Both the position numbers and the translations under genes were made by a program. Below, one piece after another: positions 1,377 to 54,967 of a DNA stretch of 64,000 nucleotides. A model generated the notes under the pieces. It was given only the letters and a program-made list of their open reading frames with translations, ran no database searches and was not told the origin of the DNA. The DNA lies in contig CM059430.1 of NCBI GenBank assembly GCA_030390025.1, positions 61,690,001 through 61,754,000 of the forward strand, read 5' to 3'. The first letter of the stretch is position 1. The number at the start of each line of letters is the position of its first letter. This DNA is from Squalus acanthias (taxonomy: Eukaryota).

Positions 1377-2201
1377 TTTGCTGATTGAAAATTCATAAAT
1401 GCTTGAAAAAGTACTAACTACAATGGCATTCTACAATATAATGCTAAAATATGCGCAGAGTCAGATGGGTGGTAATCTTGGGCCAGTTTTTGGTCTCAGT
1501 GGAGAGATTACCAAGGTAAAGGAGACACAAGGAAATCCTGTCGGAGAGAAGAGCAGAAGTTGTTCAAGGTGGGCATTCCTAGAAGAGAAGTGGCAGTGAA
1601 TTAAACACTAATACAAAAGTAAAATACTTTTGATCTGGAAGTTATTCCAGCGAATACATGTTCGCGTCCACAAGTCATAGCAACCAAAGCAACCCCCACC
1701 ACGCGCACACATACACACACACATTGGCTGCTGATATACTGAATGGCCCACGAAGCGGCTACGAGATTTCATATGTCATATATGATTCAACCATTGAACT
1801 GCAACTTGAATTATAAACTATTGATTGTGAGGAAATAAAAATCATTAACTTTTACTATTTTTCCGAATTAACACCTTGTCCTTAATGTTAAAACTTTAGA
1901 TTTATCCAACTGGATTTATGTTGTATTCGCTGAAGGATTCAAAAGCTAACAGGAGAAACAATGTCAACAAATTGTTCGCACTCTCTTGGTCAGTTCAATG
2001 TGAGAACGACATATGATTTATATAGGATAATGTATAATTCAATAGGTTAAAATTTTCGCACAAATAAAGTTTATTACAGGGTAATTTGAATAGTGGGCTA
2101 CAGTGAAGATGAAAGTGCAGAAACCATCGACGTATATTAGAGGTGGACAAATGTGAGAAGTCACACAAAACCAGGTTTTAGTCCAACAGCTTTATTTGAA
2201 A

Positions 2202-2238
2202 TCACAAGCTTTCAGAGCGCTGCTCCTTCGTCAGGTGA
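2202..2238 (-). ncRNA. Minimal type I hammerhead ribozyme, left-arm copy
   Basis: Reverse complement reads tcac-CTGACGA-aggagcagcgctct-GAAA-gc-TT-gtga; one stem II G-C pair has become G-U. Confidence 0.85.
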
Positions 2239-2545
2239 AGTGAAGAGATGCATATATGCACAGCATATATAGTCAGAGAACACTGCCAGATGATTGCAGT
2301 TAATCTTTCCAACTGCCCTTTATCACACCTCGGCAGAGAGATAATCACTGCAATCAAAGGTGTGGATGGTGTCCAAACAGGTCAGTCAAGAAAACATTAC
2401 ATCAAAGACAATGTGGCAGATGCTGGGGTCAGTATGGAAAACAAAAAACTTTTTTTGCTGGAAATCACAGCAGGTCCGGACGCATCTGTGTAGAGAGAAC
2501 AAGCCAACAACGATTCCAGTCTGGATGACTCCAGGTCAGGTGGGG

Positions 2546-7076: not shown

Positions 7077-7383
7077 CCCCACCTGACCTGGAGTCATCCA
7101 GGCTCGAATTGTCGTTGGCTTGTTCTCTCTGCACAGATGCGGCCGGACCTGCTGTGATTTCCAGCAAAAAAAGTTTTTTGTTTTCCATACAGTCCCCAGC
7201 ATCTGCCACAATGTCTTTGATATAATGTTTTCTTGACTGACCTGTTTGGACACCATACACACCTTTGATTGCCGTGATTATCTCTCTGCCGAGGTGTGAT
7301 AAAGGGCAGTTGGAAAGATTAACTGTAATCATCTGGCAGTGTTCTATGACTATATATGCTGTGCCTATATGCATCTCTTCACT

Positions 7384-7420
7384 TCACCTGACGAAGGAGC
7401 AGCGCTCCGAAAGCTTGTGA
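7384..7420 (+). ncRNA. Minimal type I hammerhead ribozyme in the PLE terminal repeat
   Basis: tcac-CTGACGA-a-GGAGC-agc-GCTCC-GAAA-gc-TT-gtga: core CUGANGA/GAAA/UH, stem I tcac/gtga, 5-bp stem II, palindromic AAGCTT stem III. Confidence 0.88.
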
Positions 7421-7677
7421 TTTCAAATAAAGCTGTTGGACTATACCTGGTGTTGTGCGACTTCTCACATTTGTCAACCCCAGTCCAACACCGGCATCTC
7501 CAAATCATAGCTACTATATTAGAGGTGATTCGGTAGAAAGCTTAGAACAACTGCGAGAATTAATGAAAATAGTTTAACATTACAGAAGTCAGCATTAATG
7601 TTTTTGTATTATGTGAATGTATTATGTGTGATAGTAGCTAACAGATGGCTTAGATTAGGCCATCAGGATTCTGCAAC

Positions 7678-24949: not shown

Positions 24950-26237
24950 TAATTTTGTGCCAAGTAAGTCCTCCCAGGCAGTCTCTTAAGACATTCAATG
25001 CAGCATCATCAGAGGCAATGTTCAGACCTAATACAACTAGTACCACCTTCATCACATCTCCGTTGTAATAGTGGACTTGCATCCGATAGTCAGCTATCCA
25101 CTTGTGCTCACACCAGATTTCACTGGAGTGTTTCACACCAGGCGTGCTTCACGCCAAAAGAGGGTTAAACGAGCTACAGCGTTTCAAAATGGCATTACAG
25201 AGCCAATTTAGAGCTTGTTAAGGGCTTTAATGGCCTCTCCCGCCTCTTGGAGGCGGGACGGAATCGGGAACCGCGCGACTGATTATGTCAAAATTGCGTG
25301 GAGGCGGGATGGAGTCGGCATAGGGTCGGAAACCCCGACCGCGCAAATTTAACCCCCCACACGCCTCCAAACCCGACTCCATGGGTCATTCAAAATCCAG
25401 CCCTGTGTGTCTCCGCTTCCACCACGTCCGTCGGCAGCGAATTCCAGGTTATCACCACTCGCTGTGTAAAAAAACGTTTCCTCACCCCCCCCGGATCTCT
25501 TGCCCAAAACCTTAAATCTGTGCCACTAGTCCTTGTACCATCAACTAGTGGGAACAGCCTTTCCCAGTCTAGCCTATCCAAACCCGTCAAAATCTTGTAC
25601 ACATCTATCAAATCACCCCTCAACCTCCTTTGCATAATGAAAACAAATCCTTTTTCCCCAACCTGTCCTTGTAGCTAAGATCCCCCATCCCTAGAACCAT
25701 TCTGGTAATTCTCCTCTGCACCCTCTCAAGGGCCTTCACATCCTTCCTAAAGATTGTTGAACAGAACTGGATGCAATACTCCATTTGTTGCCTAACCAGC
25801 GCTTTATAAATGCTCAGCATAACTTCACTACATTTGTACTGAATACCTCGTTTTATGAAGCCCAAGATCCCATATGCTTTGTTAACCAATGTCTCAATAT
25901 GCCCTGCCACCTTCAGGGAACTATGCACATTAACTCCCAGGTCCCTCTGTCCCTGCACACTCTTTAAAACTGTGCCATTAATTGTATATTGCCTCTCCCT
26001 GTTCTTTCTGCCAAAATGCATCACCTCACACTTCTCTGTATTAAATTCCATCTGCCACTTGTCTGCCCATTCTGCTAGCCTTTCAATTTCCTGTTGCAGT
26101 CGATTGATATCATCATCACTGTTCGTCACGCCACCAAGTTTGGTGTCATCTGTAAATTTAGAAATTCTACTCTATATTCCAATATCCAGGTCATTTATGT
26201 ATATCAAAAGAAGCAGTGGCCCCAGCTCTGACCCTAG
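24588..26237 (-). mobile_element. CR1 RT C-terminal fragment, interrupted by the MITE at 24618-25403
   Basis: WADKWQMEFNTEKCEVMHFG, RLRGDLI, RFFTQRVV..WNSLP. Confidence 0.88.
24618..25403. mobile_element. MITE with 12-bp perfect TIRs, containing a poly-G/(GA)n tract
   Basis: GGGCTGGATTTT ... AAAATCCAGCCC; flanks cgt/tgt (imperfect 3-bp TSD); CR1 sequence continues on both sides. Confidence 0.82.
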
Positions 26238-38425: not shown

Positions 38426-39567
38426 CAGTTGGCTGCTTCAGATATGGATGACAACCTAAGCCTAATTGATTACTATTCTCTCCAATGCAGGAACACTCAG
38501 CTCAATCATGCCACTACTGTAATAGTTGTTTCTGAGGTCACCTAATACAGAAGACTGCAAGGACGATGGCTTCACCAAATAAGCGAACAGGTCATGGTAA
38601 GCAACCATACAATCTGAAACAATACAGATATATAGTGAATGGGTTTAGTGTCAGCATGAATATTCAATGAACGTACATATGTAAACCAAACTCATACCGG
38701 ACATTTGATCGGAGGATGGTGCTAATGGGATACGCATAGGCTGTGGTAGACACTGCAGTCATTTAATAGAAGCCACGAGGACAGCACTTGTGAATTCAGG
38801 TGGATCTGGGAGCTATGATCGGGCAACAGGATGAGGGGATTCACTATAACGCACAACAAAATATAGCTCACACGATCTGCCGTTCCACTTTCACTCTTGT
38901 TTTCTCATTTGTTAGTTTCAACGTTCATAGGAAATAATACCAGAAGGTTAATAGGGATGAGGTTGGCCAGTCTGTTCATCCGACAGCTCACCATCACAGC
39001 TGAAGTCAAGCGTGTTGTTACATTTGCACAACCATGGATCAGACAAATATGCTCCTTTATTTACAACAGAACGTGAGTCGCTGGATGTTGACATATGCAT
39101 TTAATCTCATTAACATGGCGAACTCGATTGGTTAGCGTAATGGCGCTCGGGCATTCAATGCACAGACAGGATTTTTTTTACACTGATCAGGGTTTGCTGT
39201 AGTAATAGGCGGAACAAAATACGCCACAGGAACAAGAAAGGAGCACTCACAGTCTTGAGTTTTCTCCGTGTTTCCGCCAAGAGAGAAGTGCAATCTGGAG
39301 GCAAACAAGTTACATGGCTTTAAAGATGGCGCATTTTTGCGTAAGTGAGCTGCACGAGTAGCTGCAATACACCTAAGTATCCTAGATCTATTAAGTGGAT
39401 GCATTAAACCCTGAGTCTGCACGACTCTCCGCCCACAATGCTTTCGAACAATGGAAATATATCAATTGAAATTGTACATTTAGGCACGTGATATTACATG
39501 CCACTCTAGATCACGTGCAAACCCCTGGCTTCCAAAGCCCCAGGAACTTGGTGGCTCCTTGCAGCTT

Positions 39568-39601
39568 ATGGCCAGTCTAATGTTCGTCACTCAGAATGGC
39601 G
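39568..39601 (+). CDS. Putative leader exon of the VJ-C1 receptor gene
   Basis: ATG GCC..GGC G|GTGAGC: MASLMFVTQNG with a phase-1 donor that matches the V exon 263 bp downstream. The hydrophobic core is short, so the true start may differ. Confidence 0.55.
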
Positions 39602-39864
39602 GTGAGCTCCGCGCTTTTGTGCATATCTTTGGTTGGAGTTCTTTACAGAGGTGTGTTTGTTTATCTTACCGCTCCAAGCTTATCCAAAAAAAGTTAATAT
39701 TAACTAAAGACGTTATGCTTTGTGCACAATTCTTTCTTCCGTTTTTCTCATAGTTTTATTAATGTGGTTACTTTTCTTGTTTTTTTCATTTCTAAGTCAT
39801 AATATTTGTTCTTTTTCTAAAGTATGCAAACTATTATGACAACATTTTTTTAATTTTCTGATAG

Positions 39865-40170
39865 CCGCTGAAGTAACTTCGAGCAAAGTGGATCAATTCC
39901 CTAAATTAATGGAGGTTGCAAGCGGTACAAATGTTTCCATGTTCTGCACATTTCCCATATTTCAAGATGCCCCTGATGTTTATTGGTGGAGACGGGGCGA
40001 GGAGACATTTCTGGAGCCAGACAGCAGAAAGCAATTTAATGTAAAAAAGGGAAGTGGGTCATTTGATGTCCTGAATGCGAGTGTCGCCGACTCCGGAATG
40101 TATTATTGTAAAGTAAAACATCATCAAAAATCTATTGGAGATGGAAGTGGCTCCCAGCTTACTGTGTACG
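39865..40170 (+). CDS. Ig V-set exon with germline-joined J-like G strand (VJ)
   Basis: Acceptor ttttctgatag|, donor G|GTAAGT, 306 nt, open. AAEVTSSKVDQFPKLMEVASGTNVSMFCTFPIFQDAPDVYWWRRGEETFLEPDSRKQFNVKKGSGSFDVLNASVADSGMYYCKVKHHQKSIGDGSGSQLTVY contains the B-strand Cys, C-strand Trp, DSGxYYC and GxGSxLxV. Confidence 0.93.
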
Positions 40171-40789
40171 GTAAGTGTCATTGTGCCGGGGAGTGGGAGA
40201 TTCTTAGCAGAGTGCGATATATGTAAAACTCAGTAGTGAGGGTAATTTGAACTTTTATCACTTAACGAAAACCAGGTGATAGCAAATTCGTTTTACACTT
40301 CTCCCGATTATCTTTTCCATTGACCCCGGTGGACAACGGCCCGCCGATTCGCTAGCGCCCGGTTTGCACTACTGCCCCAGATCAATTTCACCCCTTCATT
40401 GTCCGCACGACATTCCAAAGTGCTTTGCATCCAATGATTTCTTTTGGAAGTGCAGTTACAATTGTTATGGAGGCAAGATACTTAAATAGTATAAATGTTT
40501 AAATATTGGCTTGAAATTAATAACTCGGATTAGATAGCCAAATTCCTTCTCACCAAAATAACGGTGCCAAGGAGCGACAATGGGAACAATTTTAACACTT
40601 CCGAGGTCAGGTATTTTATACTTCATTAAAGGCCAGCTTCTGCAACCGAACAAGGTGTCTTCATTACAAATTCAGCAGAACAATGTCCTGCTACAATCGT
40701 GGTTATTGCATGAACCAGGGCACATTTTGGCCCCACTGCTTGAAATTTCCAATCAAATATTTTCTGTACAGAATTGTCCAAAATCTGGA

Positions 40790-40980
40790 ATTCTCTCTCC
40801 CAGAATGCTGTGGGACAATTGAAGCTTTCAAGATTGAGATGGATAGATTTTTGTTAGGTGCGGGTATCAAAGGATATGGAGTTAAGTGGTCAAATGGATT
40901 TGAGGTACAGTTTAACAATCATCTAACTGAATGGCGGGGCAGACTCGAGGAGCTAAATGGACTCCTCCTGTTCCTATATC
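40790..40980 (+). mobile_element. CR1 3'-end fragment in the V-C1 intron
   Basis: FKIEMDRFL..GIKGYG followed by CR1 3' UTR-like sequence. Confidence 0.75.
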
Positions 40981-42198
40981 CGCAGTTTAGGCTGTGTACT
41001 TGCTTCCACTGAAAACTTATTTGAGACTGCCAAACTCATTTCAAAAAGGAATCGTATAGCCCATTGAGAGGGGAAATGTTGGTCCTACCCTCAATGCTGG
41101 ATTCCACCCCAAGTCCTAGATCTTGCAAGAAAGTGTATCAACGCAATGCCCCTGTTTGAACCTCTGTTTTACGCCAATTGGACTCTCATACACTTACAAT
41201 CTGTAAAGTACGGGCAGATTCTCGCCGAAATTACTATATACTCGTGAGCTCCCTTGTTTGTAATTCATGATTTCCATTTACAATCTTCCAATCCCAGACT
41301 GAAGTTACTGCAGGAGATTAAGTCAACACTTTCGTCCTCTTCCTCCACGGAAATTCTACCGCATTACATTTTATACCTAAACAGATCAGTGGTAAAGGAA
41401 TGGAGGAATTCTAAGCTTTGGTTGGGCAGTCAACACGGTACTGCTGGGAATAAAGGCTAACATAACTTTCCAAGTTAATAATGCCCCTGATTTAAAAGAT
41501 TGGTATTACTACAAAGTCGGGAAAGTAAACATTTAAAGAAAAGATGTTAAGGAGATTGTTTGGAATAAACTGACGAAAGAATGCAAACCTAATAAGGGAC
41601 TCTACTTTCAGCTAAAGAGTGACTCTTACTCCAGCTGACAAAGCTTCACATTAGTATAAGCCGATTGTAGGACTGATATAAGCAAAATCTTCTTCAGGCA
41701 AAACGTGTTCAACAGACCGAATAGACTTGGGGAAGGACAAAACCCCTGGAATTATATAAGACGTGCACTCTGAGTTAGGAATTCCAATTCGGTTTCTCTC
41801 ATCTGTATGGATGTTGTGATCTACACAGAGATACATCATCACCCATATAATTCTTTCATGACGTGAAAAATATTCTAGCCCACGGTTCGCGCTCTGGAGA
41901 AAGTACATTTAGTGCAAGCTGCACAATCTGAAATCTCCACCGCAGAAACTGAAATGCTGAGTTCGCAACTGTAATGCATGAATTCTAATCTATAGATATG
42001 CCAACATCCTGTCTGCAATCTGTGTAGACATCAGAGATATTTCGATATATTGGTAAGAATTCTTCTTCTCAATATTCACCATTTATATAAAATATGTTTG
42101 CAATATATGAAATACCTAAAAAGCTACCAATTTTGAAATAAACACACAAAATGAGAATGTGCTCCTTTAAGTTGAAAAATACTTTTTTTCTGTTAAAG

Positions 42199-42495
42199 TT
42201 CCCCCCATTCCCCTGAAAATCGCTCCTGTCGAAGGGATTTCAGCGACTTCTCTAAAACTCGAGTGTAAAACGGCTGCCTTTTACCCGGAGCATTTAGAAA
42301 TCTCCTGGCGAAGAGATGGTGTCGAAATTCTGACCGGAATAGCAACTGTGAAAAACAAGAGCGTGGAGGGACTGTTTGAGGTTTCCAGCTCATTCGAAGA
42401 AGCACAGCCTGCCCAGAGCGGAATTGTTTATACGTGTCTAGTATCTCATGTCTCTCTTCTGGTGCCCGCCAGTGTCAGCTACACCGTCAAGCAAG
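42199..42495 (+). CDS. Ig C1-set exon
   Basis: Acceptor tttttttctgttaaag|, donor G|GTAAGA, 297 nt, open, phase 1-1. VPPIPLKIAPVEGISATSLKLECKTAAFYPEHLEISWRRDG...GLFEVSSSF...VYTCLVSHVSLLVPASVSYTVKQ contains the C1 hallmarks LxCxxxxFYP, W and YxCxVxH. Confidence 0.93.
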
Positions 42496-43777
42496 GTAAG
42501 ATTTGGACATATTATGCGTGGAACTGCCGCGAACATCTTTCAAGGGCATTTCTTCGATGACTCAGATTTCTTTGAGTGTTATTAATCTACATCTCTTCTA
42601 TCTATGTATTGACGCCATCAGCACAACTAGGACTATTACTGGAAGTGGCTTCTCCAAATAGTTCATCAATAGACGAGACAGCATTGAACCTAAAATAGAC
42701 CAGGTAGAGCTGTCTAGAAATCTACTGCTCCCCAGACAGAGCCTTTATTTATCACTTTCCAATTCTCCCCGAATGTCATGAGGTTGAATTTACTTCAAAA
42801 GCCTCACGCGCAAAACTTTTGCAAATATCTTCCAAAAATATAAAGAAATTATTACCTGGATTTCCTCCATCCACTGAGCAATTCCTCTCCTCAATTTCTT
42901 GTAGATTGATGGAGCAACACGCATTGCTTCTAAATCTACTCTGGCTACCGGTATAGCTATGGACTCTTTAGACCAATAAATAACAGTTTATGAAGTTTTC
43001 GGAACCGTTTTTTATCACTATGGACGTTAGAGTAAAATTATGGAATGGTGGAAATTACCGTGCAGATGGAAACAATTTGGCACTTGGCCCCTGTGCTGGT
43101 GAGAACCAATCTCCCATGAAGGGAGTCTACGCCAGGCTACTTGTATGAAAATGAGGAACCTTAAGGCAGATAAGACAGCAGGATACACTTCGCAGGTCTC
43201 TGGAGACAGCCCAGTGGGCAGCAAGCTAAACCGGGAGTGTCATGATCAGGTCGTGGTGAAGGGGTTGCGGGGTGGGGCGGCGGTGCCCGGGTTGCAGTAT
43301 CCCAGATTATCGTCATGGGGCACTCTTGCTTTTCCTATTCAAGCAAAAATAATGTAAATGTACATGTTCAGATCTCTTTATCTCTGTCGCTAGCAAAAGT
43401 GGCCACAGAGTGCAGGGCGTACCAGTTATATCTTGAAATGGCCATCGGGATCCCATGTTCACCATAGAACCTCGATTTGGATATGAAGAGTAGCCTACTG
43501 CCTGAGACAAAGGAGATAGCCCCTAGCAACAGGCCCTCTGACAGTGGAAGGCGCCGCTGTCGGCGTTAAAATGCTGCTAAGTCTACCGACCCCGTTTTGA
43601 GGCCATTATAGCACCGTTAACGCCGATTTAGGCAAGTTCAAATCGATCCCCATGGAGTTCGGTTTAAAGTAACTATTTAATGGGCCCATGGCTTTGTATA
43701 AACCAATCATTGTTGCTTCCATACGATAATATTTATATACAACAGTTTTATATCTTGCTTTTAATCCAACATTGTAG

Positions 43778-43891
43778 GTCACAGTTTCAGCATCCGGGTC
43801 CTCATGATTGCTCGGCTTGTTCTGGGTTTTTTGATAATTCTTGCACTGACGGGAATTATTGTGGACCATCTGAAAATAACTTCCAATGAAG
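43778..43891 (+). CDS. Transmembrane exon with intramembrane Arg
   Basis: Acceptor attgtag|, donor G|GTAAGA, 114 nt, phase 1-1; GHSFSIRVLMIARLVLGFLIILALTGIIVDHLKITSNE. Confidence 0.85.
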
Positions 43892-45260
43892 GTAAGAAAA
43901 CACATTATTAATTCAGGAAATCACATATGAAGTATACACACAGATAGGATTGGTTTTATGGAGATGAGAAATGTATTTTTGCCAGCTGTTTGTTTGTAAG
44001 CAGCGGCACAGAGCAGCAGCTGATTAAAAAGAGCAGGATCCCGAACACCAGTGATTAAAAGGAGCGGGGCAGAGAGCAGCAGCTGATATCAGACAAACGG
44101 AGGGAAAAACTCAAAAAATGACATCATTATCCGTATAGAGTGAGGAGTGGCGGGAGCCGAGGAATCATAGTTAATTGTTTAATTTCTCATGAATCAAAGT
44201 ATTACGACCATAGAATGCTTAAGGTAAACAAATAGATCTCAGATCTGAGAAAACGTCGAGGTCGAGAGCGGCATGAAGTAAATGGGTATGATGTAATTGC
44301 CATTACGAGAGACATGGTTTCAGGGTAACCAAAGCTAAGAACTGAATGTTCCAGGGTACTCAACATTTAGGAAGGACAGACAAAAAGGAAAAGGTGGTGG
44401 CGTAGCGCTGTTAATAAGGGAAACGGTCGGTACGGCAGAGATAAAAGATCTTGCCTTGGCAGATCGTGATGTAGAACTGGAATCATTTTGCGTGGAGCTA
44501 AGAAACAGCAAAGTGCGGAAAACATTGGTGGGATAGACCACCAAATAGTAATGGTAATGTAGGGCACAGTATCAATCAAGAGATTAGAACTGCATGTAAC
44601 AAGAGCAATACGGTAATCATGGGGGACTTTAATCTACATATTGACTGGGCAAATCAAATTACCACTAATGGTGTGGAGGATGAATTCTTGGAATGCATGC
44701 GAGATGGTTTCCTGGACCAGAATGTGGAGGAACCAAACAGGGAACAGGCTATTCTGGATCTGGTACTGTGTAATGAGAAAGGGCTAATCAATAATCTTTT
44801 GGTAAAGGGGCCTTTAGGGAAAAGTGACCATAATATGATTGAATTTTACATTAAGTTTGAGCGTAATGTTGTCCAATCTGAAACTGAGGTCTTCAATCTA
44901 AACAGAGGAAACTACAAGGGTATGAGGGACAAGTTGGCCATGGTAGATTGGAAAACTACACTAAAAGGTATGAAGGTGGACATACAATGGCAAAGATTCC
45001 AGTAAATAATGCATAATTTGCAACAAACATATATTTCTCTAGGGCATAAAAAGCCAAAAGGAAAAGTGATCCAACTATGGCAAACAAAAGTAATTAAGGC
45101 TAGTATTAAGTCAAAGGAGGAAGCTTATAAAGTTTCCAGAAAAAGCGGTCAGCCTGAGGATTGGGATCTTTTCAGAAATCAGCAAAGGGGGACCAAGAAA
45201 TTGATACAGAAAGGAAGAATGGAATATTGGCTCAAACTAGCGAAAAATATAAAAACGGAT

Positions 45261-45566
45261 TCACAGAACCCCCACAATGCAGATAGAGGCCATTTCGGCC
45301 CATCGAGCCTGCACCGACACATATCCCACCCTATCCCCGTAACCCCATGTATTTAATCCCCCCTAACACTAAGGGTCAATTTAGCATAGCCAAATCAACC
45401 TAACCCGCACATCTTTGGACAGTAGGAGGAAACCGGAGCACCCGGAGAAAACCCACGCAGACACGGGGAGAATGTGCAAACTCCACACAAACAGTCACCC
45501 GGGGCCGGGTTCGAACCCGAGTCTCTGGCGCTGTGAGGCAACAGTGCTAACCACTATGCCACCGTG
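45261..45566 (-). mobile_element. HE1-like V-SINE (tRNA head, V domain, CR1-derived tail)
   Basis: Minus strand A box TGGCATAGTGG, B box GTTCGAACC, central gtgtggagtttgcacattctccccgtgtctgcgtgggtttt, CR1-type tail gatgggccgaaatggcctct. Confidence 0.85.
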
Positions 45567-46510
45567 TTAGACCGAATTGTAAAAGCTTCTATAGGTATGT
45601 GAAAAGGAAAAGACTGGCAAAGATAAATGTAGGTCCTTTACAGTCAGAGACGGGAGAATCTATAATGGAGAATGAGGAAATGGCCGAGAAATTAAATAAA
45701 TACTTTGTTTCTGTCTTCACGGAGGAAGACACAAAAAACCTCCCAGAAATACGAGAAAACCAAGGGTGTGAGGAGAATGAGGAACTTAAAGAAATTATTA
45801 ATAGCAAATAAACAGTACTAGCAAAATTAATGGGACTAAAAGTCGATAAATCCCAAGGACCAAATGACCTACATCCTAGGGTTTTGAAAGAGGAGGCCAT
45901 TGGAATAGTGGACGCACTGGTTGTCATCTTCCAAAATTCTATAGATTCTGGAACGGTTCCTGCAGATTGGAGGATAGCAAATGTAACGTCACTATTTAAG
46001 AAAGGAGGGAGAGAGATAACGGGGAACTACAGACCTGTTAGCCTCACATCAGTAGTTGGGAAAATGCTGGAATCTATTATAAAGGATGCAATAACTGCGC
46101 ACTTAGAAACTAATAGTAAGATTGGGCAGAGTCAACATGGATTTATGAAAGCGAAATCCTGTTTGACAAACTTATTTGAGATCTTTGAGGATGTAACTAG
46201 TGGAGTAGACAAAGGGGAACCGGTAGATGTGGTGTATCTGGATTTTCAGAAGGCCTTCGATAAGGTCCCACAGAAGAGGTTAGTGAACAAAATTAGGGCA
46301 CATGGAATTGGAGGTAATATACTAGCATGGATTGAGAATTGGTTAACCGACAGAAAACAAAGAGTAGGGATAAACGGGTCTTTTTCAGTATGGCAGGCTG
46401 TGACTAGTGGGGTACCGCAGTGATCGGTGCTTGGGCGCCAGCTATTCACAATCTCTATCAATGCTTTGCATGAGGGGTCTAAATATAATATTTCCAAATT
46501 TGCTGATACC

Positions 46511-48160
46511 TAGAAACATAGAACATAGGAGCGGGAGTAGGCCATTCGGCCCCTCGAGCCTGCTCCGCCTTTCAATGCGATCATGGCTGATCATCAAAAT
46601 TTAGTACCCTGTCCCTGCTTTCTCCCCATATCCCTTGATCCGCATAGCCTTAAGAAATATATCTAACTCCTTCTTGAATGTATTTAATGAATTGGACTCA
46701 ACTGTCTTCTGTGGTAGAGAATTCCACCGATTCAACACTCTCTGGGTGAAGAAATTCCTTCTCATCTCAGTCCTACATGGCTTACCCCTTATCTTTAGAC
46801 TGTGATCCCTGGTTCTGCACTCCCCTGCCATCGGGAACATCCTTCCTGCATCAAGTCTATCTAGTCCTGTTAGAATTTTATAAGTTTCAATGAGATCCCC
46901 TCTCATTCTTCTAAACTCTAGCGAATACAAGCCCATTCGACCCAATCTCTCTTTTTCGTCATTACTGCCATCCCAGGTATCAGTCTGGTGAATCTTCGCT
47001 GCACTCCCTCCATGGCAAGAACATCCTTCCTCAGATAAGGCGACCAAAACTGCACTCAATACTCAAGGTGTGGTCTCACCAAGGCCCTGTACAACTGCAG
47101 CAAGACATCCTTGTTCCTGTACTCGAATCCTCTCGCTATGAAGGCCAACATACCATTTGCCTTCTTAACAGCCTGCTTCACCTGCCTGCTTACCTTCAGC
47201 GAGTGGTGAACAAGGACACCCAGATCGCGTTGCACTTCCCCTGACTGAGCCAAAGTATGTATTTAATTGTTCTGCCATTTCTTTGTTCCCCATTATAAAT
47301 TCCCCTGATTCTGACTGCAAGGGATCTACGCTTGACTTCAGCAATCTTTTTCTCTTCACATAGCTATAGCAGTTTTTACAGTCAGTTTTTATGTTACCTG
47401 CAAGCTTACTCTCATAATCTATTTCCCCCCTCTTAATTAACCCCTTTGTCCTCCTTTGCTGAATCCTAAACTGCTCCCAATCCTCAGGTTTGCTGCTTTT
47501 TCTGGCCAATTTATATGTCTTGGATCTTATGCTATCCCTAATTTCCCTTGTTAGCCACGGTTGAGTCACCTTTTTTGTTTTATTTTTATGCCAAACAGGG
47601 ATGAACACATTCTGTAGTTCATCCATGCGATCTTTAAATGTTTGCCATTGCCTATCCACCGTCAACCCTTTAAGTAACGTTCCCCAATGCATCTTAGCCA
47701 ACTCGCGCCTCAAACCATCATAGTTTCCTTTATTTGAATGCAGGACCCGAGTCTCTGAGTCAACTACTTCACTCTCCATCTTAATGAAGAATTCTATCAT
47801 GATATGATCGCTCCTCCCCAAGGGGCCTCGCACAACAAGATTGCTAATTAATCCTTTCTCATTACATAATACCCAGTCTAAGATGGCCTGATCTCTAGTT
47901 GGTTCATCGACATATTGGTCCAGGAAATCATCCCGTATACACTCTAGGAATTCCTCCTCCACAGTATTGTTACTAATTTAATTAGCCCAATCTATATGTC
48001 GATTAAAATCACCCATGATAACTGCAGTGCCCTTATTGCACGCATCTCTAATTTCCCATTTAATGCCATTCCCAACCTCAGCATTACTGTTAGGGGGTCT
48101 GAAAACAAATCCCACGAACGTTTTCTGCCCCTTGGTATTTCTCAACTCTACCCATACAGA
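46511..48160 (-). mobile_element. Antisense CR1, internally deleted, with intact 3' end
   Basis: ORFs 47165-47962, 47056-47253 and 46601-47059; RT core missing at about 47240; tail ctatgttctatgtttcta. Confidence 0.88.
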
Positions 48161-48384
48161 TTGCAGATTCCAGATGATACAACGCTAGTTGACAGTGTTA
48201 GTTGCGAAGAGGATGTGAAGAGGCTTCAAGGGGATCTCAACAGGCTCAGAAGGTGGGCAAGAACATGGCAGATGGAATATAATGTGGAAAAATGTGAAGT
48301 TATCCACAATGGTAGAAAAAACAAAAAAGCAGATTATTTCCTAATGGTGAAAGATTGGGGAATGCCGATGCACAAATGGACCTG

Positions 48385-49340
48385 AGTGCTTTGCTAACCA
48401 CTCTCTCAATATGTCTTGCCACTTTCAGGGACCTATGCACAGTAACTCCCAGGTCCCTCTGTCCCTGCACACTCTTTAAAACTGTGAAAATAAGTGTATA
48501 TTGCCTCTCCCTGTTCCTTCTGCCAGAATGCATCAACTCACAGTTCTCTGTATTAAATTCCATAAAGGTGCCATACAAGAGGCTATTAAACAAAATTAGG
48601 GCTCATGAGATTCGGGGTAATATACTAGTATGGATTGATGATTAGTTAATTGACAGACACCAGAGAGTAATAAAGGGCTCATTTTCGGGTTGGCAGGCTG
48701 TAACTAGTGGCTTACCACAAGGATCAGTGCCTGGGCCTCAGCTATTCACAATCTACATCAATGATTTGGATGAGGGGACCAAATGTACTATATCCAATTT
48801 TCCTGATGATACAAAGCTGGGTAGGAATGCAAGTTGTGAGGACGATGCGAGGAGGCTTCAAGGGGATATAGGCAGGCTAAGTGAGTGGGCAAGAACATGG
48901 CAAATGTAATATAATGTGGATAAATGTGAAGTTATCCGCTTTGGTAGGAAAAATAGAAAAGCAGAGTATTTATTAAATGGTGAGAGATTGGGAAATGTTG
49001 ATGTTCAGAGGAACCTGGGTGTCCCTGTATACGAATCACTGAAAGTTAACATGCAGGTACATCAAGCAATTAGGAAAGCAAATGGTATGTTGGCATTTAT
49101 TACAAGAGGATTTGAGTATAAGAGTAAAGACGTCTTTCTGCAATTATATGGGCCCTGGTGACACCACACATGGAGTATTGTGTGCAGTTTTGGTCTCCCT
49201 AACTAAGGAAGGATATGCTTGCCATAGAGGGAGTGCAGACTGACTGGTTCCTGGGATGGGGGGATTGTCCTATGAGGAGAGATTGAGTAGATTAGGCTTA
49301 TATTCTCTAGAGTTTGGAAGAATGAGAGGTGATCTCATGT
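48385..49340. mobile_element. Two further CR1 RT fragments (- 48385-48562, + 48563-49340)
   Basis: EFNTENCELMH..QRDLGV on the minus strand; KVPYKRLL..GPQLFTIYINDL..FPDD on the plus strand. Confidence 0.8.
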
Positions 49341-49599
49341 GGGCATAGAGAGTGAGTACCGACAGGCATCACATGGTCGATCCCGATCCCGTCCGCATTA
49401 GACTGGCAATTTCCAGCAGCGGCCCCTGGGTAACAGTCAGATGCAGGATTTAATGCTAACTGCCCTCTTCCTCTCCCTGGTCTCTCAGGCCACTTTTAGC
49501 ATTTTAACTGCTGCCGGAACTTGGATCATTTAACACAACACAGACAGGCAATCCAACCTGGCATCTTCTGGTTTGTATGGCTCGGTGCTATACCCATGG

Positions 49600-52500
49600 G
49601 TTCGTTAAGATGTGGATTCTTTGCAGCCGAGAGCGAGAGTCCCGAAGGTTGTGTTGCCTGCCCGGTGCCAGGGTTAAGGACATCTCCTCTGGGCTGGAGA
49701 GAAACTTGGAATGAGAGGGGGAGGATCCAGTTGTCGTGGTCCATGTTGGTACCAACGACATAGATAGGACAAGGAAAGAGGTTCTGCTGAGGGAGTATGA
49801 GCAGCTAGGGGCCAAATTAAAAAGCAGAACCACAAGGGTAATAATCTCTGGATTACTACCTGAGCCACGAGCAAATTTGCATAGGGTAAATAAAATCAGA
49901 GAGTTAAATGCGTGGCTCAAAGTCTGGTGTGGGAGAAATGGGTTTTGCTTCTTGGGACACTGGCACCAGTACTGGGACGGGAGAGAGCTGTTCCGTTGGG
50001 ACGGACCTCATTGGCCAGTGCTGGGACTAGATTCCTGGCGAATCGAATAACTAGGGCTGTAGAGAGGGCTTTAAACTAATTAGTGGGGGGCGGGGGGGGG
50101 GCGGGTTTCAGGAGAGCGAAGAATAAAAATGTCAGCAGAGAAGGCAATAGAGCAAATTAGCAGTGGGGAAATTAAAAACCAGAGCGTGTCAGGAATGGAC
50201 AGAATAGATAAAGATAAAGTTAAAGTAGTAAAGGGGGTAAAAGCAGGAATAAATTGTCACAAACCATGTTTAAAAGTTCTTTATCTGAATGCACGCAGCA
50301 TTCGTAACAAAATAGACGAGTTGACGGTACAAATAACTACACATGGGTATGATCTGGTGGCCATTACAGAAACATGGCTGCGAGGTGACCATGACTGGGA
50401 ACTAAACATCCAGGGGTATTTGACTATTAGGAAGGACAGACAGGAAGGAAAGGGAGTTGGGGTGGCTATGTTAATAAAGGATGGAATCACTGCAATATTG
50501 AGAAATGATATTGGGTCAAAGGATCAGGATAGTGAAACAGTTTGGGTGGAGATAAGGAATAATAAGGGGAAAAAGTCACTAGTGGGCGTAGTCAAAAGGC
50601 CTCCTAACAGTTGTAGCTCTGTTGGTCGGAGTATAAATCAGGAAATAGTTGGGGCTTGTAATAAGGGAACAGCTATAATCATGGGAGATTTAACTTTCAT
50701 ATTGACTGGACAAATCAAATTGGGCAGGGCAGCCTTGAGGAAGAGTTCATAGAGTGTATTAGGGATGGGTTCCTTGAGCATTATGTTACTGAACCAACCA
50801 GGGGGCAGGCAATGTTAGATCTGGTCCTGTGTAATGAGACAGGATTAATAAAAAATGTCCTAGTAAAGGATCCCCTTGGAATGAGTGACCATAACATGGT
50901 TGAATTCCAAATTCAGTTGGAGGGTGAGAGAGTTAGATCTCAAACCAGCGTACTAAGCTTAAATAAAGGAGATTTTGAAGGTATGAGAGCAGAGTTGACT
51001 AAAGTGGACTGGGAAAATAGATTAAGGTGTAAGACAGTACAGGAGCAGTGGTGTACATTCAAGGAGGTATTTCACAACTTTCAAGAAAAATATATTCCAC
51101 TGAGGAAAAAGGGGCGTTAAACAAAAGACAGCCATCCGTGGCTAAGTAAAGTAATAAAGGATAGTATCCGACTGAAAAAAGGGCATATAAAGTAGCCAAA
51201 TCTAGTGGGAGGATAGAAGATTGGGAAGCATTTAAAAGCCAGCAAAGAATAACTAAAAGATTAATTAAGAAGGGGAAGATAGATTTTGAAAGTAAACTAG
51301 CAAAAAATATAAAAACAGATAGCAAGAGTTTCTAAAGTTACATAAAAAGAAAAAGGGTGGCTAAAGTGAATGTTGGTCCCTTAGAGGACGAGACCGGGAA
51401 ATTAGTAGTGGGTGACACGGAGATGGCAAATACGCTGAACAAATATTTTCTATCAGTCTTTACAGTAGAGGATAGTAAAAATATCCCAACACTGGAAAAA
51501 AGGGGGGCAATAGGGGGAGAGGAGCTAAACACGATCAAAATCACTAAGGAGATGGTACTCGGTAAGATAATGGGACTTAGGGTGGATAAATCCCCTGGAC
51601 CTGATGGCTTACATCCTAGGGTCTTGAGAAAAGCAGCGGTAGGGATTGCGGATGCATTGGTGGTAATTTTCCAAAACTCCCTGGATTCGTGAAAGGTCAA
51701 AGCAGATTGGAAAACTGCTAATGTAACACCCTTATTTAAAAAGGGAGGAAGACAAAAGGCTGGAAACTATAGACCAGTTAGCCTAACATCTGTGGTTGGT
51801 AAAATGTTGGAGTCCATTATTAAGGAAGCAGTAACAGGACATTTGGATAAGCATAATTTAATCGGACAGATTCAGCATGGTTTTATGGAGGGGAAATCAT
51901 GCTTGACAAATTTGCTCAAATTCTTTAAGGACGTAACAAACAGGCTGGATAAAGGGGAACCAGTGGATGTGGTGTATTTGAACTTCCAAAAGGCACTTGA
52001 TAAGGTGCCACACAAAAGACTACTGCACAAGATAAAAAAATCACGGCATTGGGGTTAATATACTGGCATGGGTGGAAGATTGGCTATCTAACAGAAAACA
52101 GAGAGTTGGGATAAATGGTTCATTCTCGGGTTGGCAATCAGTAACTAGTAGTGTTCTGCAAGGGTCAGTGCTGGGACCCCAACTCTTTACAATCTATATT
52201 AACGATTTGGAGGAGGGGATCAAGTGCAACGTATCCAAGTTTGCTGACGATACAAAGATGGGAGGAAAAGCAGTGAGTGAGGAGGACATCAAAAACCTGC
52301 AAAAGGACATAGACAGGCTAAGTGAGTGGGCAGAAATTTGGCAGATGGAATATAATGTTGGAAAGTGTGAGGATATTCACTTTGGCAGAAAAAATCAAAG
52401 AGCAAGTTATTATCTAAATGGAAAGAAACTGCAAAGTGCTACAGTACAAAGGGATCTGGGGGTCCTAGTGCATGAAACACAGAAGGTTAGCATGCAGGTA

Positions 52501-53180
52501 CAACTGGTGATCAGGAAGGCCAATGGAATCTTGGCTTTTATTGCAAGGGGGAAGAAGTATAAAAGCAGGGAAGTCTTGCTTCAGTTATACAAGGTACTGG
52601 TGAGGTCACACCTGGAATACTGCATGCAATTTTGGTTTCCATATTTAAGAAAAGATATACTTGCTCTCGAGGCATTTCAGAGAAGGTTCACTCGATTGAT
52701 TCTGGAGATGAGGGGGTTGATTTATGAGGAATGTTTGAGTAGGTTGGGCCTCTACTCATTGGAATTCAGAAGAATGAGAGGCGATCTTATCGAAACATAT
52801 AAGATTGTGAGGGGGCTTGATCGGGTGGAGGCGGGGAGGATGTTTCCACTGATGGGTGAGACTAGAACTAGGGGCATAATCTTAGAATAAGGGGCTGCCG
52901 TTTCAAAACTGAGATGAGGAGAAACGTCTTCACTCAGAAGGTAGTAAATCTATGGAATTTGCTACCTCAGAGAGCTGTGGAAGCTGCGACATTAAACAAA
53001 TTTAAAACGGAATAGACAGTTTCCTAGCTGATAAGGGAATTAAGGGTTATGGGGAGCGGGCAGGGAAGTGGACGTGAGTCTAGGTTCGGATCAGCCATGA
53101 TCCTATTGAATGGCAGAGCAGGCCCGAGGGGACATATGGCCTACTCCTGCTCATACTTCTTATGTTCTTATGTTCTTATG
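49600..53180 (+). mobile_element. Near full-length CR1: ORF1 SGNH-esterase part, ORF2 APE endonuclease + RT, 3' UTR
   Basis: VVHVGTND..IISGLLP..WDGPH (ORF1); YLNARSI..TETWL, SDHN, QGSVLGP, KFADD (ORF2); tail (ttcttatg)n; several stops and frameshifts. Confidence 0.93.
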
Positions 53181-53835
53181 AAATGTAATTATATGTGTGC
53201 AAAAGATTATTCGACATCAGGTGAGTGCAGACGGTTCGAAGGTTTTCATTCAGATATTCATATAACTAAGAAGCCTATTTTTCTTTCAATTCTACATTAA
53301 GTGCAGTGCAAACGATTCAGTGCGACATCGGTTATGATTTAGGTAATCGGTTGTTAATTTTTATATTAGTTAATTCTAATATGGAAAAGATAAAGTACAC
53401 AATTACACATACACAATCATCATGAGTGAAAGAATATCGCCGAATGAAAGTTATTAAAAACAAATGAAAATTTTGCACCCTAATATTTTGGGACATCCTG
53501 AGATGACGGCATATTTATTTAAAATTGAGGAAACTTTGTCTTCGTCCTAGAATGATTTACTTTGATAATTATTGTCGAATCACAATGAAATGATATAATT
53601 GAAGAACGTTCCGTTAATTTAATAGTTGGATATTTATGCAGTTGTGAGTGTGTCTGTGAATCTGTTTATATTGATGCTGACGTGCTCTAAAGAGCACCGC
53701 GTGTGATGGAAAATAGAAAAAATAAACAAGGTAATGACATTATTTAAAAACACAGACACGATGGGCCGAATGCCCTCATTCTGTGTCGTAGATTTCTATG
53801 ATTCTATGATTCTGAATGTTGTTTTTAATGGCCAG

Positions 53836-53897
53836 GTAAAGAACTGCTGATCATTTCTGCCTCCGCTGCTCAAAATTCCACGAGAGCAATAGGTTAG
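53836..53897 (+). CDS. Candidate terminal cytoplasmic exon
   Basis: gtttttaatggccag| in phase 1 gives GKELLIISASAAQNSTRAIG-stop; unique sequence just after the CR1 block; AATAAA at about 54244. Confidence 0.4.
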
Positions 53898-54967
53898 CCT
53901 TTGGGAAAGAATAACGCGTGTCCAGGCACAGCTGGGAAAGAAAAACAGAAACATACGAAAGCAGGGAACGCGATGAAGGAGCCGCAATCGAAACGGATAA
54001 AGGGTTCCTGCAGCACTCGCTTACAGCCGGGTTCCATTATACTCCGCTACACACTCTTTCTGCAGCATTAGATTATACAAAGGTAACTGGTAGTTGGCTC
54101 CTGTATATAATGAGCTTATTGCAATCTATGTAAATGCAGTATTAAGAAGGGGGAGAGGGTTATAGCTGACACTTCATGTGATTATTTTTTGCGGGCTGAC
54201 ATGTATCTTGATGGATGAATGTTTCCAGCTGACGATATTTTTCAATAAATCTAAGTGTTGATATTTATACGTGTCAAGTTGTATCGAGTGTTTAAACCTT
54301 CCATATGTCTTATATTTTACTGATGTAAAATGAACTGCCTTAGAGAGAAAGTTCCTTTCATAGAATTATAAATACCGAACGCATTGGAGGACCATTAACA
54401 TCTGACATTGATTTGTACTCAAAGTCCACCATCAGAATTTATGCCATGGGCGAAACCAATTCAAATGAAAGTTTGCTCCTTGAAGAGAAAGTTGGACACT
54501 GTGAACCTGGAATGGTTAAAAATACGCGGTCACATTGCGGGATACACCGTATTCAGCATTTAGACGGAAACAAATGGGAGGAGCGAAGCAGTAATTGCGA
54601 CGAGTAAAGTGAAATAATATTCGTCCGACCGTATTCTTTCTTCGACTAAACTTGAGAGGCTCTAAACATTTGGACCCAAAGCCATCTTATTGCAATGGGC
54701 AATTTAAAGAAAATAATGACTGTGAAATAGCTAATTAGTTAATCACGGTAACTAACTGCTAATTTACTTAACATCGAGCTGAAGCCACCTATTTAATCAA
54801 ACTAGACCTCAAGTGACCAAATAGTTCAAGAAATAAACTACAGATTACCAACAAATAAAGAAGTTAATTAATTAACTAAATAATTAATTAAGACTTGGCA
54901 GTAATTGCACTGTGTCGGGATTTTAGTATGTGGCAGTTTGTGGACAACGAGACTACCCCAGACTGCC

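What the first reader, a model, noticed from the sequence alone, without database searches (positions are those of the whole stretch)
39568..53897. Intact non-rearranging antigen-receptor-like gene: leader - germline-joined VJ - C1 - TM(Arg) - short tail
Seen: three open exons (39865-40170, 42199-42495, 43778-43891) with canonical splice sites, all phase 1, encode a V domain ending in a J-like GDGSGSQLTV strand, a true C1-set domain and a TM helix. There is no RSS heptamer between YYC and the GxG motif. The ORF track only shows pieces of this. Known: C1-set domains are largely confined to Ig/TCR, MHC, B2M, tapasin and SIRP-type proteins, and a single-exon VJ followed by C1 is the architecture proposed for the pre-RAG ancestor of Ig/TCR chains (compare the non-rearranging VJ-C1 genes described in amphibians, birds and sharks, and VJ-only NKp30). 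Inference: this is a TCR-chain-shaped innate receptor of about 270 aa, possibly an undescribed chondrichthyan family. I cannot assign an ortholog.
Basis: partly seen in the sequence, partly recalled or inferred. Interest (0 to 1): 0.9.

Follow-up and report, generated by a model that had tools for sequence, protein, structure and literature searches.

The report
Shark activating VJ-C1 immune receptor gene
This is an intact shark gene for a small cell-surface immune receptor built like one chain of a T-cell receptor but needing no gene rearrangement; it belongs to a large, little-studied family of paired "on" and "off" receptors found across sharks, rays and chimaeras.

Summary
Five + strand coding exons, all phase 1 with AG/GT sites, encode a leader (39596-39650), a short V domain ending in a J-like GxGxxLxV strand (39865-40170), a true C1-set domain (42199-42495), a TM helix with Arg (43778-43891) and a 20-residue tail end (53836-53897).

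The gene is not an orphan. RefSeq models from 20 chondrichthyan species form a multigene family, auto-named SIRP-alpha-like, B7-H6-like, Ig-lambda-like and so on. Of 124 stored relatives, 100 have V plus C1.

The family is paired:
- Some members carry this gene's R-x17-[D/E][H/Y] helix and a short tail.
- Others have near-identical ectodomains (82% V identity to this gene; 92.7% within one catshark pair) with an uncharged TM, and many of these carry ITIM tails.

I read this gene as the activating, adaptor-coupled type.

Deeper kinship is unresolved. Full-length profiles reach SIRPs first. The V profile scores higher on shark V-NAR, TCR and IgL V than on SIRP or NKp30. AU tests do not separate the options.

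No RNA evidence was obtained. I could not read the shark NCR3-family paper, which may cover relatives. First-stage notes report VJ-C1-TM-ITIM clusters on other pieces of this genome.

The parts
39596..39650 (+). Leader exon: ATG, 18 codons plus 1 base, phase 1, donor GT at 39651
   Evidence: Translation is a hydrophobic signal-like peptide. Splice context. It has the same length and split-leader position as family models. Assignment is inferred; there is no RNA evidence.
39865..40170 (+). V(J) exon, germline-joined: short V/I-type Ig domain ending in a GDGSGSQLTV J-like strand
   Evidence: Pfam V-set 2.3e-10 and I-set 4.1e-8. 77-82% identical to shark homologues. No RSS heptamer.
42199..42495 (+). 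C1-set Ig domain exon
   Evidence: Pfam C1-set 4.1e-8. FYP, LVSH and the 13-residue Cys-Trp spacing are present (criteria from PMC2785349). 73-76% identical to homologues.
43778..43891 (+). Stalk and transmembrane exon with conserved Arg, then 17 apolar residues, then Asp-His; start of the cytoplasmic tail
   Evidence: Translation. The R-x17-[D/E][H/Y] motif is shared by 17 stored proteins, 16 with R and 1 with Q, including Callorhinchus milii. 72.5% identical to P0162.
53836..53897 (+). Terminal coding exon: 19 codons plus a split codon, stop TAG at 53895-53897
   Evidence: tblastn of P0160 gives 15 of 19 identical at 53835-53891. The same tail ends P0162, P0169 and P0157. Acceptor context.
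43892..53835 (.). Intron 4, about 9.9 kb, filled with LINE fragments on both strands
   Evidence: RVT_1 hits for ORFs at 45830-46420 and 52072-52887. An endonuclease-type hit (23.7 bits, just under the 24.5 cut-off) for 50129-50749.
54244..54249 (+). First AATAAA after the stop codon, a candidate poly(A) signal 347 nt downstream
   Evidence: Pattern search and sequence. Inferred only.
39153..39339 (+). Upstream block conserved with the 5' part of a Heptranchias perlo gene model (probably 5' flank or UTR, not coding here)
   Evidence: tblastn of P0169 gives 58% and 44% identity in two pieces, with an in-frame stop in the window copy.

Best explanation
This is an intact gene for a type I membrane protein of about 277 residues. 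It is the activating-type member of a chondrichthyan multigene family of non-rearranging V(J)-C1 paired receptors.

Shown:
- The five-exon structure.
- The V-set/I-set and C1-set identity of the two Ig exons.
- The conserved TM exon with Arg, and a tail without tyrosine.
- Homologues in 20 cartilaginous-fish species.
- Sister genes with near-identical ectodomains but an uncharged TM, many of them with ITIM-bearing tails.

Inferred mechanism: the membrane-distal V domain binds a ligand, still unknown, through its CDR-like loops. The C1 domain serves as a stalk and possibly as a cis-pairing surface. The Arg lies about six residues into the helix and recruits an ITAM adaptor with a TM Asp, of the FcR-gamma/CD3-zeta type. 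Engagement would therefore activate the cell, counterbalanced by the ITIM-bearing paralogues that see the same or similar ligands.

Deeper ancestry relative to SIRP, NKp30/NCR3, UrIg and rearranging Ig/TCR is unresolved.
For: Gene structure and domains.

Family:
- A V-exon search of 1.84 billion representatives gave single-V hits of 40-88% identity in proteins of 220-420 aa.
- 100 of 124 stored relatives of 600 aa or less have both a V and a C1 match.

Same architecture and tail in other species: P0162 and P0169 (Heptranchias) and P0157 (Scyliorhinus).

Pairing:
- The window V is 82% identical to the ITIM-bearing Heterodontus P0151.
- Catshark P0157 (Arg TM) and P0159 (uncharged TM) are 92.7% identical over 219 ectodomain residues, then diverge completely.

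TM motif: 17 stored proteins (13 genes after collapsing isoforms), 16 with Arg, from sharks and a chimaera.

Clade: the window V sits in a 16-row elasmobranch clade with support 100/99.

Arg position: primate NKp30 carries its Arg at a similar depth in the helix.
Against: - There is no transcript evidence. The only 3 runs offered held none of the exons; their contigs covered only an intronic repeat.
- Adaptor coupling is inferred from the charged TM alone. The conserved Asp-His at the cytoplasmic end of the helix is unexplained.
- One family member has Gln in place of Arg.
- A Heterodontus model (P0160) joins C1 directly to the last exon. The TM exon may therefore be skipped in some transcripts, giving a soluble form.
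- No inhibitory partner lies in this window.
Confidence: 0.7

Rival explanations
1. It is a direct (co-)orthologue of tetrapod SIRPs: a SIRP-beta-like activating member of the chondrichthyan SIRP family that has one C1 domain instead of two.
For: - The full-length family profile (A1) finds rodent SIRP-alpha (1.6e-34) and a bird SIRP-beta-like protein (2.2e-25) as its first non-chondrichthyan hits.
- BLASTP of the ITIM paralogue P0151 against SIRP-alpha aligns V plus D2 (3e-13), and C1/D3 plus TM plus tail with matching tyrosine motifs (2e-12).
- 18 of the 50 chondrichthyan hits carry SIRP-type automatic names.
- The paired ITIM/charged-TM organisation is the same.
- An AU test does not reject SIRPs joined to the window's clade (p = 0.088).
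Against: - By domain, SIRP is not the nearest. The V profile gives SIRP D1 only 19-24 bits, against 59 for shark V-NAR, 42-47 for TCR and about 41 for IgL V.
- The C1 profile gives SIRP D3 30-38 bits and D2 about 20, against about 49-52 for MHC II beta, IgL C and IgNAR C.
- The V is 12 or more residues shorter than SIRP D1 (gaps).
- There is one C1 domain, not two, and Arg rather than Lys in the TM.
- ITIM motifs of the LTYAxL type recur in many unrelated receptors (recalled).
- The word prefilter may have kept Ig/TCR chains out of the candidate set.
Confidence: 0.2
2. It belongs to the already published shark NCR3 (NKp30) family as one of its divergent subtypes. In that case it is described in print and is a paralogue of NKp30.
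For: - Family members without C1 are auto-named NCR3-like (P0130).
- Primate NKp30 is picked up by the V profile (9e-3).
- BLASTP of primate NKp30 hits 77 family proteins, best P0211 at 36% identity and 9e-11.
- NKp30 has a single-exon VJ domain, a TM Arg and a short tail (plus recalled knowledge).
- Kinlein et al. 2021 report eight highly divergent shark NCR3 subtypes. This is recalled from the abstract; the paper was not held.
Against: - NKp30's best matches lie in another subclade (P0211, P0218, P0130, P0212-P0216), not in the window's clade.
- An AU test disfavours NKp30 joined to the window's clade (p = 0.020) but not NKp30 joined to that other subclade (p = 0.40). The groups were named after seeing a first tree.
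- PMC12227049 refers to NCR3 only as a VJ-domain gene and does not mention a C1.
Confidence: 0.25
3. It is a germline-joined derivative of a rearranging shark antigen-receptor gene (IgL, IgNAR or TCR) that later acquired a new TM and tail.
For: - The V profile's best single-domain PDB matches are shark V-NAR (59 bits), TCR and IgL V.
- It has a split leader and a J-like end.
- Unchecked first-stage notes place related VJ-C1-TM-ITIM genes inside Ig light-chain clusters of this genome.
- Germline joining is known in sharks (recalled).
Against: - The family is old and broad: elasmobranchs and a holocephalan, with subfamilies only 32-45% identical.
- It has V-only and ITIM forms.
- The C1 is no closer to IgL C than to MHC II beta.
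- Identity to any PDB Ig/TCR V or C is about 30% or less.
- There is no RSS remnant.
Confidence: 0.06
4. The gene is an unexpressed relic: intact by chance, or recently silenced, with the 9.9-kb LINE-filled intron 4 disrupting its 3' end.
For: No RNA support was obtained. Intron 4 carries several LINE fragments. A first-stage note reports a neighbouring gene with a dead ectodomain just beyond the window (unchecked).
Against: All five exons are open, with canonical splice sites, conserved Cys/Trp cores and conserved TM and tail motifs. The terminal exon is conserved despite the long intron. Long repeat-filled introns are usual in shark genomes (recalled).
Confidence: 0.1

Closest known systems
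SIRP family (SIRP-alpha/beta/gamma; PTPNS1)
   Same: N-terminal V domain with a J-like strand in one exon, followed by true C1-set domain(s). Paired members with ITIM tails or a basic TM residue and a short tail. First non-chondrichthyan hit of the full-length family profile.
   Different: One C1 instead of two. The V is about 12 or more residues shorter (I-set-like). Arg high in the helix instead of a mid-helix Lys. Per-domain profile scores are lower for SIRP than for Ig/TCR/MHC domains. Synteny and CD47 binding were not tested.
NKp30 / NCR3
   Same: Non-rearranging VJ exon, TM Arg about six residues into the helix, short tail without tyrosine, activating receptor logic. Primate NKp30 detects the family.
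   Different: NKp30 of mammals has no C1 domain. Its nearest shark relatives are a different subclade of the family, whose members also carry a C1.
UrIg and UrIg2 (shark non-rearranging antibody-like genes)
   Same: Split leader, single-exon VJ and C1-type constant domains in cartilaginous fish. UrIg2 (PDB 9dmx) is the top PDB match of the C1 exon (3.4e-15) and of the C1 profile.
   Different: UrIg has three C domains and is secreted. UrIg2 has nine or more C domains (PMC12227049, sections 4 and 7). The high PDB score is a sum over three C domains; the best single domain scores 27.3 bits. No paired ITIM/charged-TM forms are described for UrIg.
TCR chains
   Same: V(J)-C1-TM with a basic residue and a very short tail, so one chain has the same outline. 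TCR V domains are among the better V-profile matches (42-47 bits).
   Different: No V/J segments or RSS. No membrane-proximal Cys for an interchain disulfide. The family has ITIM-bearing paralogues, which TCR chains lack.
IgNAR V domain (V-NAR)
   Same: Short V lacking the C'' region. Best single-domain PDB match of the V profile (4hgk_C, 59 bits over the whole domain including the J strand).
   Different: V-NAR is assembled by rearrangement and sits on a five-C-domain secreted or membrane heavy chain. The similarity may partly reflect shared shortness and shark origin. No tree was possible.

Membership tests
SIRP family | N-terminal V-set domain with a J-like G-x-G-x-x-L-x-V strand encoded in one exon | tested here: met
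   The domain is short and I-set-like, unlike SIRP D1.
SIRP family | Two membrane-proximal C1-set domains (D2, D3) | tested here: not met
   There is one C1 exon only between the V and TM exons. Most family members also have one.
SIRP family | Paired inhibitory (ITIM) and activating (basic TM residue, short tail) members with similar ectodomains | tested here: met
SIRP family | Closest sequence relationship to SIRPs, domain by domain | tested here: inconclusive
   The full-length profile reaches SIRPs first. The V and C1 profiles score Ig/TCR/MHC domains higher. AU p = 0.088.
SIRP family | Synteny with the SIRP cluster; CD47 binding | not testable with these tools
NKp30 / NCR3 | Single non-rearranging VJ domain as the only Ig domain | tested here: not met
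   A C1 exon is present.
NKp30 / NCR3 | TM Arg with a short signalling-motif-free tail | tested here: met
NKp30 / NCR3 | Orthology: mammalian NKp30 closest to this gene's clade | tested here: not met
   The best BLASTP hits are P0211, P0218 and P0130 in another subclade. AU p = 0.020 against joining the window's clade.
UrIg / UrIg2 | VJ followed by three or more C1-type domains | tested here: not met
   One C1. The definition is from PMC12227049, sections 4 and 7.
Rearranging Ig/TCR (germline-joined copy) | V nested within a rearranging V clade; C within the matching C clade | not tested
   No shark Ig/TCR reference sequences could be obtained as stored proteins. Only PDB score ranks are available.
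C1-set Ig domain | (F/Y)(F/Y/H)P at the B-C loop, xVxH after the F-strand Cys, and 13 residues from the B-strand Cys to the C-strand Trp | tested here: met
   read against the criteria in PMC2785349. Pfam C1-set is above its cut-off.

The most novel reading that the evidence does not exclude
The family is a surviving non-rearranging lineage of the antigen-receptor chain itself, not a SIRP or NKp30 offshoot. It would be a V(J)-C1 chain that kept TCR-style signalling through a basic TM residue and an ITAM adaptor. Its short V would be the closest living non-rearranging relative of the IgNAR/TCR-type V, and its genes would still sit among Ig light-chain clusters. This would give a membrane-bound counterpart to UrIg/UrIg2 and a concrete model for what the RAG transposon invaded.
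Probability: 0.12. Interest if true: 0.85.

Novelty: new variant of a known kind. Interest (0 to 1): 0.45.

Why it matters
Non-rearranging VJ-C1 genes are the material from which the origin of antibodies and T-cell receptors is reconstructed. Cartilaginous fish are the oldest lineage with both.

This gene shows that sharks carry a TCR-chain-shaped, charged-TM receptor within a large paired activating/inhibitory family. That family exists only as automatic gene predictions under at least eight conflicting names.

Characterising it would do two things:
- Clarify how SIRP, NKp30 and antigen-receptor chains are related.
- Provide candidate NK- or myeloid-type receptors for shark immunology.

On its own, this single member is an ordinary representative of that family.

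Tried and rejected
RNA support: the look-up of sequencing runs listed only 3 small runs of the same species label, with about none of the words. Laying them on 39500-44000 covered only an intronic repeat at 40805-40971, at 90-95% likeness. There is therefore no evidence either way.

Paralogues in the window: tblastn of the four exon peptides found only themselves. The next best hit, 25281-25322 (14 residues, E = 0.022), I take as chance. The ITIM paralogue P0151 matched only the V and C1 exons, so the window holds no alternative inhibitory tail exons.

Outgroup placement: a quick V tree put a partial primate NKp30 isoform inside a shark subclade. The careful tree with the full V joined NKp30 to a frog TCR-alpha-like chain, and the tool flagged this as long branches meeting. 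AU tests left three options open: NKp30 joined to subclade II (p = 0.40), SIRPs joined to the window's clade (p = 0.088), and a monophyletic chondrichthyan family (p = 0.30). I therefore do not claim a sister group.

ESM Atlas neighbours of homologue P0162 were mixed (Ig kappa-like, SIRP, tapasin-related, CD80, CD200, B7/butyrophilin) and are leads only.

Literature: seven searches found no paper describing a shark V-C1 paired family. This is not proof of absence. These papers were not held and are known to me only by recall or from reference lists:
- Kinlein 2021
- Flajnik 2012
- Ohta 2019
- Flajnik 2023 (UrIg)
- Ohta and Flajnik 2015

Supplements were not consulted.

Full report
**What is in the sequence.**

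On the + strand there are five coding exons with canonical AG/GT boundaries:
- 39596-39650: leader, 55 nt.
- 39865-40170: 306 nt.
- 42199-42495: 297 nt.
- 43778-43891: 114 nt.
- 53836-53897: 59 coding nt plus TAG.

All junctions are phase 1. The summed coding length is 831 nt, or about 277 codons.

The ATG at 39596 gives a phase-1 exon with a hydrophobic leader.

The first AATAAA lies 347 nt after the stop. Intron 4 (9.9 kb) is packed with LINE reverse-transcriptase and endonuclease fragments. The rest of the window holds no other cellular gene and no paralogous exon.

**Domain identity.**

Exon 2 passes Pfam V-set (2.3e-10) and also I-set (4.1e-8). Exon 3 passes C1-set (4.1e-8).

The C1 exon has the three hallmarks listed by Hatherley et al. 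(PMC2785349, passages read): FYP, xVxH after the second Cys, and 13 residues between Cys and Trp.

The V domain ends in GDGSGSQLTV directly before the donor. No RSS-type heptamer lies in or near the exon. It is short, with 41 residues from Trp to the second Cys. This fits its I-set score and the fact that its best single-domain PDB match is shark V-NAR.

Exon 4 encodes a helix in which an Arg is followed by 17 apolar residues and then Asp-His. The tail (12 residues, plus 20 from the last exon) has no tyrosine.

**It is not an orphan.**

A search of 1.84 billion cluster representatives with the V exon alone returned many giant multi-Ig proteins. It also returned a series of single-V proteins of about 220-420 aa at 40-88% identity.

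Their records are RefSeq or UniProt predictions from 20 chondrichthyan species: sharks, rays and the chimaera Callorhinchus milii.

Of the 57 hits to a 25-member family profile, 50 are chondrichthyan. Their automatic names disagree:

| Automatic name | Hits |
|---|---|
| SIRP-type | 18 |
| B7-H6-like | 9 |
| Tapasin-related-like | 2 |
| Ig lambda-like | 2 |
| TCR-beta-like | 2 |
| MHC II beta-like | 2 |
| PD-L1-like | 1 |
| CDON-like | 1 |
| Uncharacterised or unnamed | 13 |

Of the 124 stored relatives of 600 aa or less, 100 have V plus C1, 19 have V only and 5 have C1 only.

Three models have exactly this gene's plan: Heptranchias perlo P0162 and P0169, and Scyliorhinus canicula P0157. All three include the TM exon and the small terminal exon. 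tblastn puts their exon ends on the window's splice sites, with 77% (V), 76% (C1) and 72.5% (TM) identity for P0162.

In a careful V tree the window falls in a 16-row elasmobranch clade with support 100/99.

**A paired family.**

The nearest V domains (81-82%) belong to Heterodontus francisci models. Several of these continue into an uncharged TM and a long tail with several ITIM-like tyrosines (P0151, P0163, P0164).

In the catshark, P0157 (Arg TM, short tail) and P0159 (uncharged TM, different tail) are 92.7% identical over 219 ectodomain residues and then diverge completely.

The R-x17-[D/E][H/Y] helix occurs in 17 stored proteins, which is 13 genes after collapsing isoforms. Sixteen have Arg and one has Gln. 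They span several subfamilies and include the chimaera, so this activating-type TM exon is ancient.

This is the classic signature of paired activating/inhibitory immune receptors.

**How it probably works.**

Shown: the architecture, the conserved basic TM residue, the tyrosine-free tail and the ITIM paralogues.

Inferred from established knowledge of NKp30, NKp46, Fc-alpha-RI and SIRP-beta (recalled): an Arg near the outer third of the helix pairs with the TM Asp of an ITAM adaptor such as FcR-gamma or CD3-zeta. Ligand binding by the V domain would then activate the cell, and the inhibitory paralogues would set the threshold.

The ligand is unknown. The role of the conserved Asp-His at the inner end of the helix is also unknown.

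The exons contain no Cys beyond the two intradomain pairs, so a disulfide-linked dimer is unlikely. C1 domains usually pair in cis (PMC2785349), so a non-covalent partner is possible.

A Heterodontus model (P0160) joins C1 directly to the last exon. Both junctions are phase 1, so a soluble isoform is possible.

**Relationship to known families.**

*SIRP.*
- The full-length profile reaches rodent SIRP-alpha (1.6e-34) and a bird SIRP-beta-like protein (2.2e-25) before any other non-chondrichthyan protein.
- An ITIM paralogue aligns with SIRP-alpha through V-D2 and through C1/D3-TM-tail.
- That search prefilters by shared words, and domain by domain SIRP is not nearest.
- With the same V profile the scores are: SIRP D1 19-24 bits, primate NKp30 26-34 bits, shark V-NAR 59, TCR 42-47 and IgL V about 41.
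- With the C1 profile the scores are: SIRP D3 30-38 and D2 about 20, while MHC II beta, IgL C and IgNAR C each score about 48-52.

*NKp30.*
- Primate NKp30 hits 77 family proteins, best in a different subclade (P0211, 36%, 9e-11).
- The members of that subclade also carry a C1 domain.
- AU tests do not reject NKp30 joined to that subclade (p = 0.40). They disfavour NKp30 joined to the window's clade (p = 0.020).

*UrIg2.* PDB 9dmx tops the C1 searches only by summing three domains. UrIg and UrIg2 have three to eleven C domains and no paired forms (PMC12227049, sections 4 and 7).

I could not build trees with shark Ig/TCR references, because no such sequences could be obtained as stored proteins.

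**Literature.**

Seven searches found no description of a shark V-C1 paired family. PMC12227049 (sections 4 and 7, plus passages) and PMC10751288 (passages) discuss UrIg, NKp30 and VJ-C1 genes but not this family.

The paper most likely to overlap is Kinlein et al. 2021 on eight shark NCR3 subtypes. It was not held, and what I say of it is recalled from its abstract.

**Earlier notes of this scan (unchecked).**

- One note on this window reads the charged TM and tiny tail as I do.
- Another reports a gene with a dead ectodomain 2.7 kb beyond the window's end.
- Several report clusters of VJ-C1-TM-ITIM genes on other pieces of this genome, some inside Ig light-chain clusters.

The scan has therefore met this family before on other DNA.

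**Limits.**

- No RNA evidence was obtained: 3 of the 3 listed runs held none of the exons.
Synteny, dN/dS and a 3-D model are therefore missing.
- The joined protein was never searched.

**Verdict.**

This is a real, intact, well-conserved gene. It is the activating-type member of a chondrichthyan V(J)-C1 paired receptor family related to SIRP, NKp30 and antigen-receptor chains.

It is a new variant of a known kind rather than a lone pre-RAG relic. Interest is moderate. It would be higher if proper trees or synteny tie the family to the antigen-receptor lineage itself.

Noticed in passing
window 43892-53835: Intron 4 is a stack of LINE fragments on both strands. There are RVT_1 hits at 45830-46420 and 52072-52887 and an endonuclease-type ORF at 50129-50749. 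The tiny terminal exon beyond it is nevertheless conserved.
   Followed up: partly
window 40805-40971: A short interspersed repeat in intron 2 is the only part of 39500-44000 covered by contigs of the three runs. About 100 contigs per run cover it at 90-95% likeness, at high summed depth.
   Followed up: no
window 39153-39339: The stretch just upstream of the leader exon resembles the N-terminal 'coding' part of the Heptranchias perlo model P0169 (58% and 44% identity), with a stop in the window copy. It is probably a conserved 5' flank or UTR that was mis-annotated as coding in that model.
   Followed up: partly
stored proteins P0211-P0216, P0130, P0218 (other species): The shark and ray proteins most like mammalian NKp30 share its CRVE...TGNGT...L.V end of the V domain. 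Six of the eight carry a C1 domain, which mammalian NKp30 lacks. They also have a basic, tyrosine-free tail.
   Followed up: partly
stored protein P0160 (Heterodontus francisci) against window 42495/53836: One annotated homologue joins the C1 exon directly to the terminal exon, with no TM exon. In the window both junctions are phase 1, so the same skip would give a soluble form.
   Followed up: no
V profile A2 against PDB: The V-domain profile also matches the constant (CL) domain of bovine lambda chains at about 44-46 bits. This underlines that the 'V' is unusually short and intermediate between V, I and C1 types.
   Followed up: no
window 2133-7527: There are inverted reverse-transcriptase ORFs (RVT_1 at 2779-3879 on the minus strand and similar ORFs on the plus strand). 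This fits the first-stage note of a Penelope-like palindrome.
   Followed up: no
window 43778-43891 and 17 stored homologues: An acidic residue followed by His or Tyr is conserved at the cytoplasmic end of the activating-type TM helix in 17 of 17 proteins. I have no explanation for it.
   Followed up: partly
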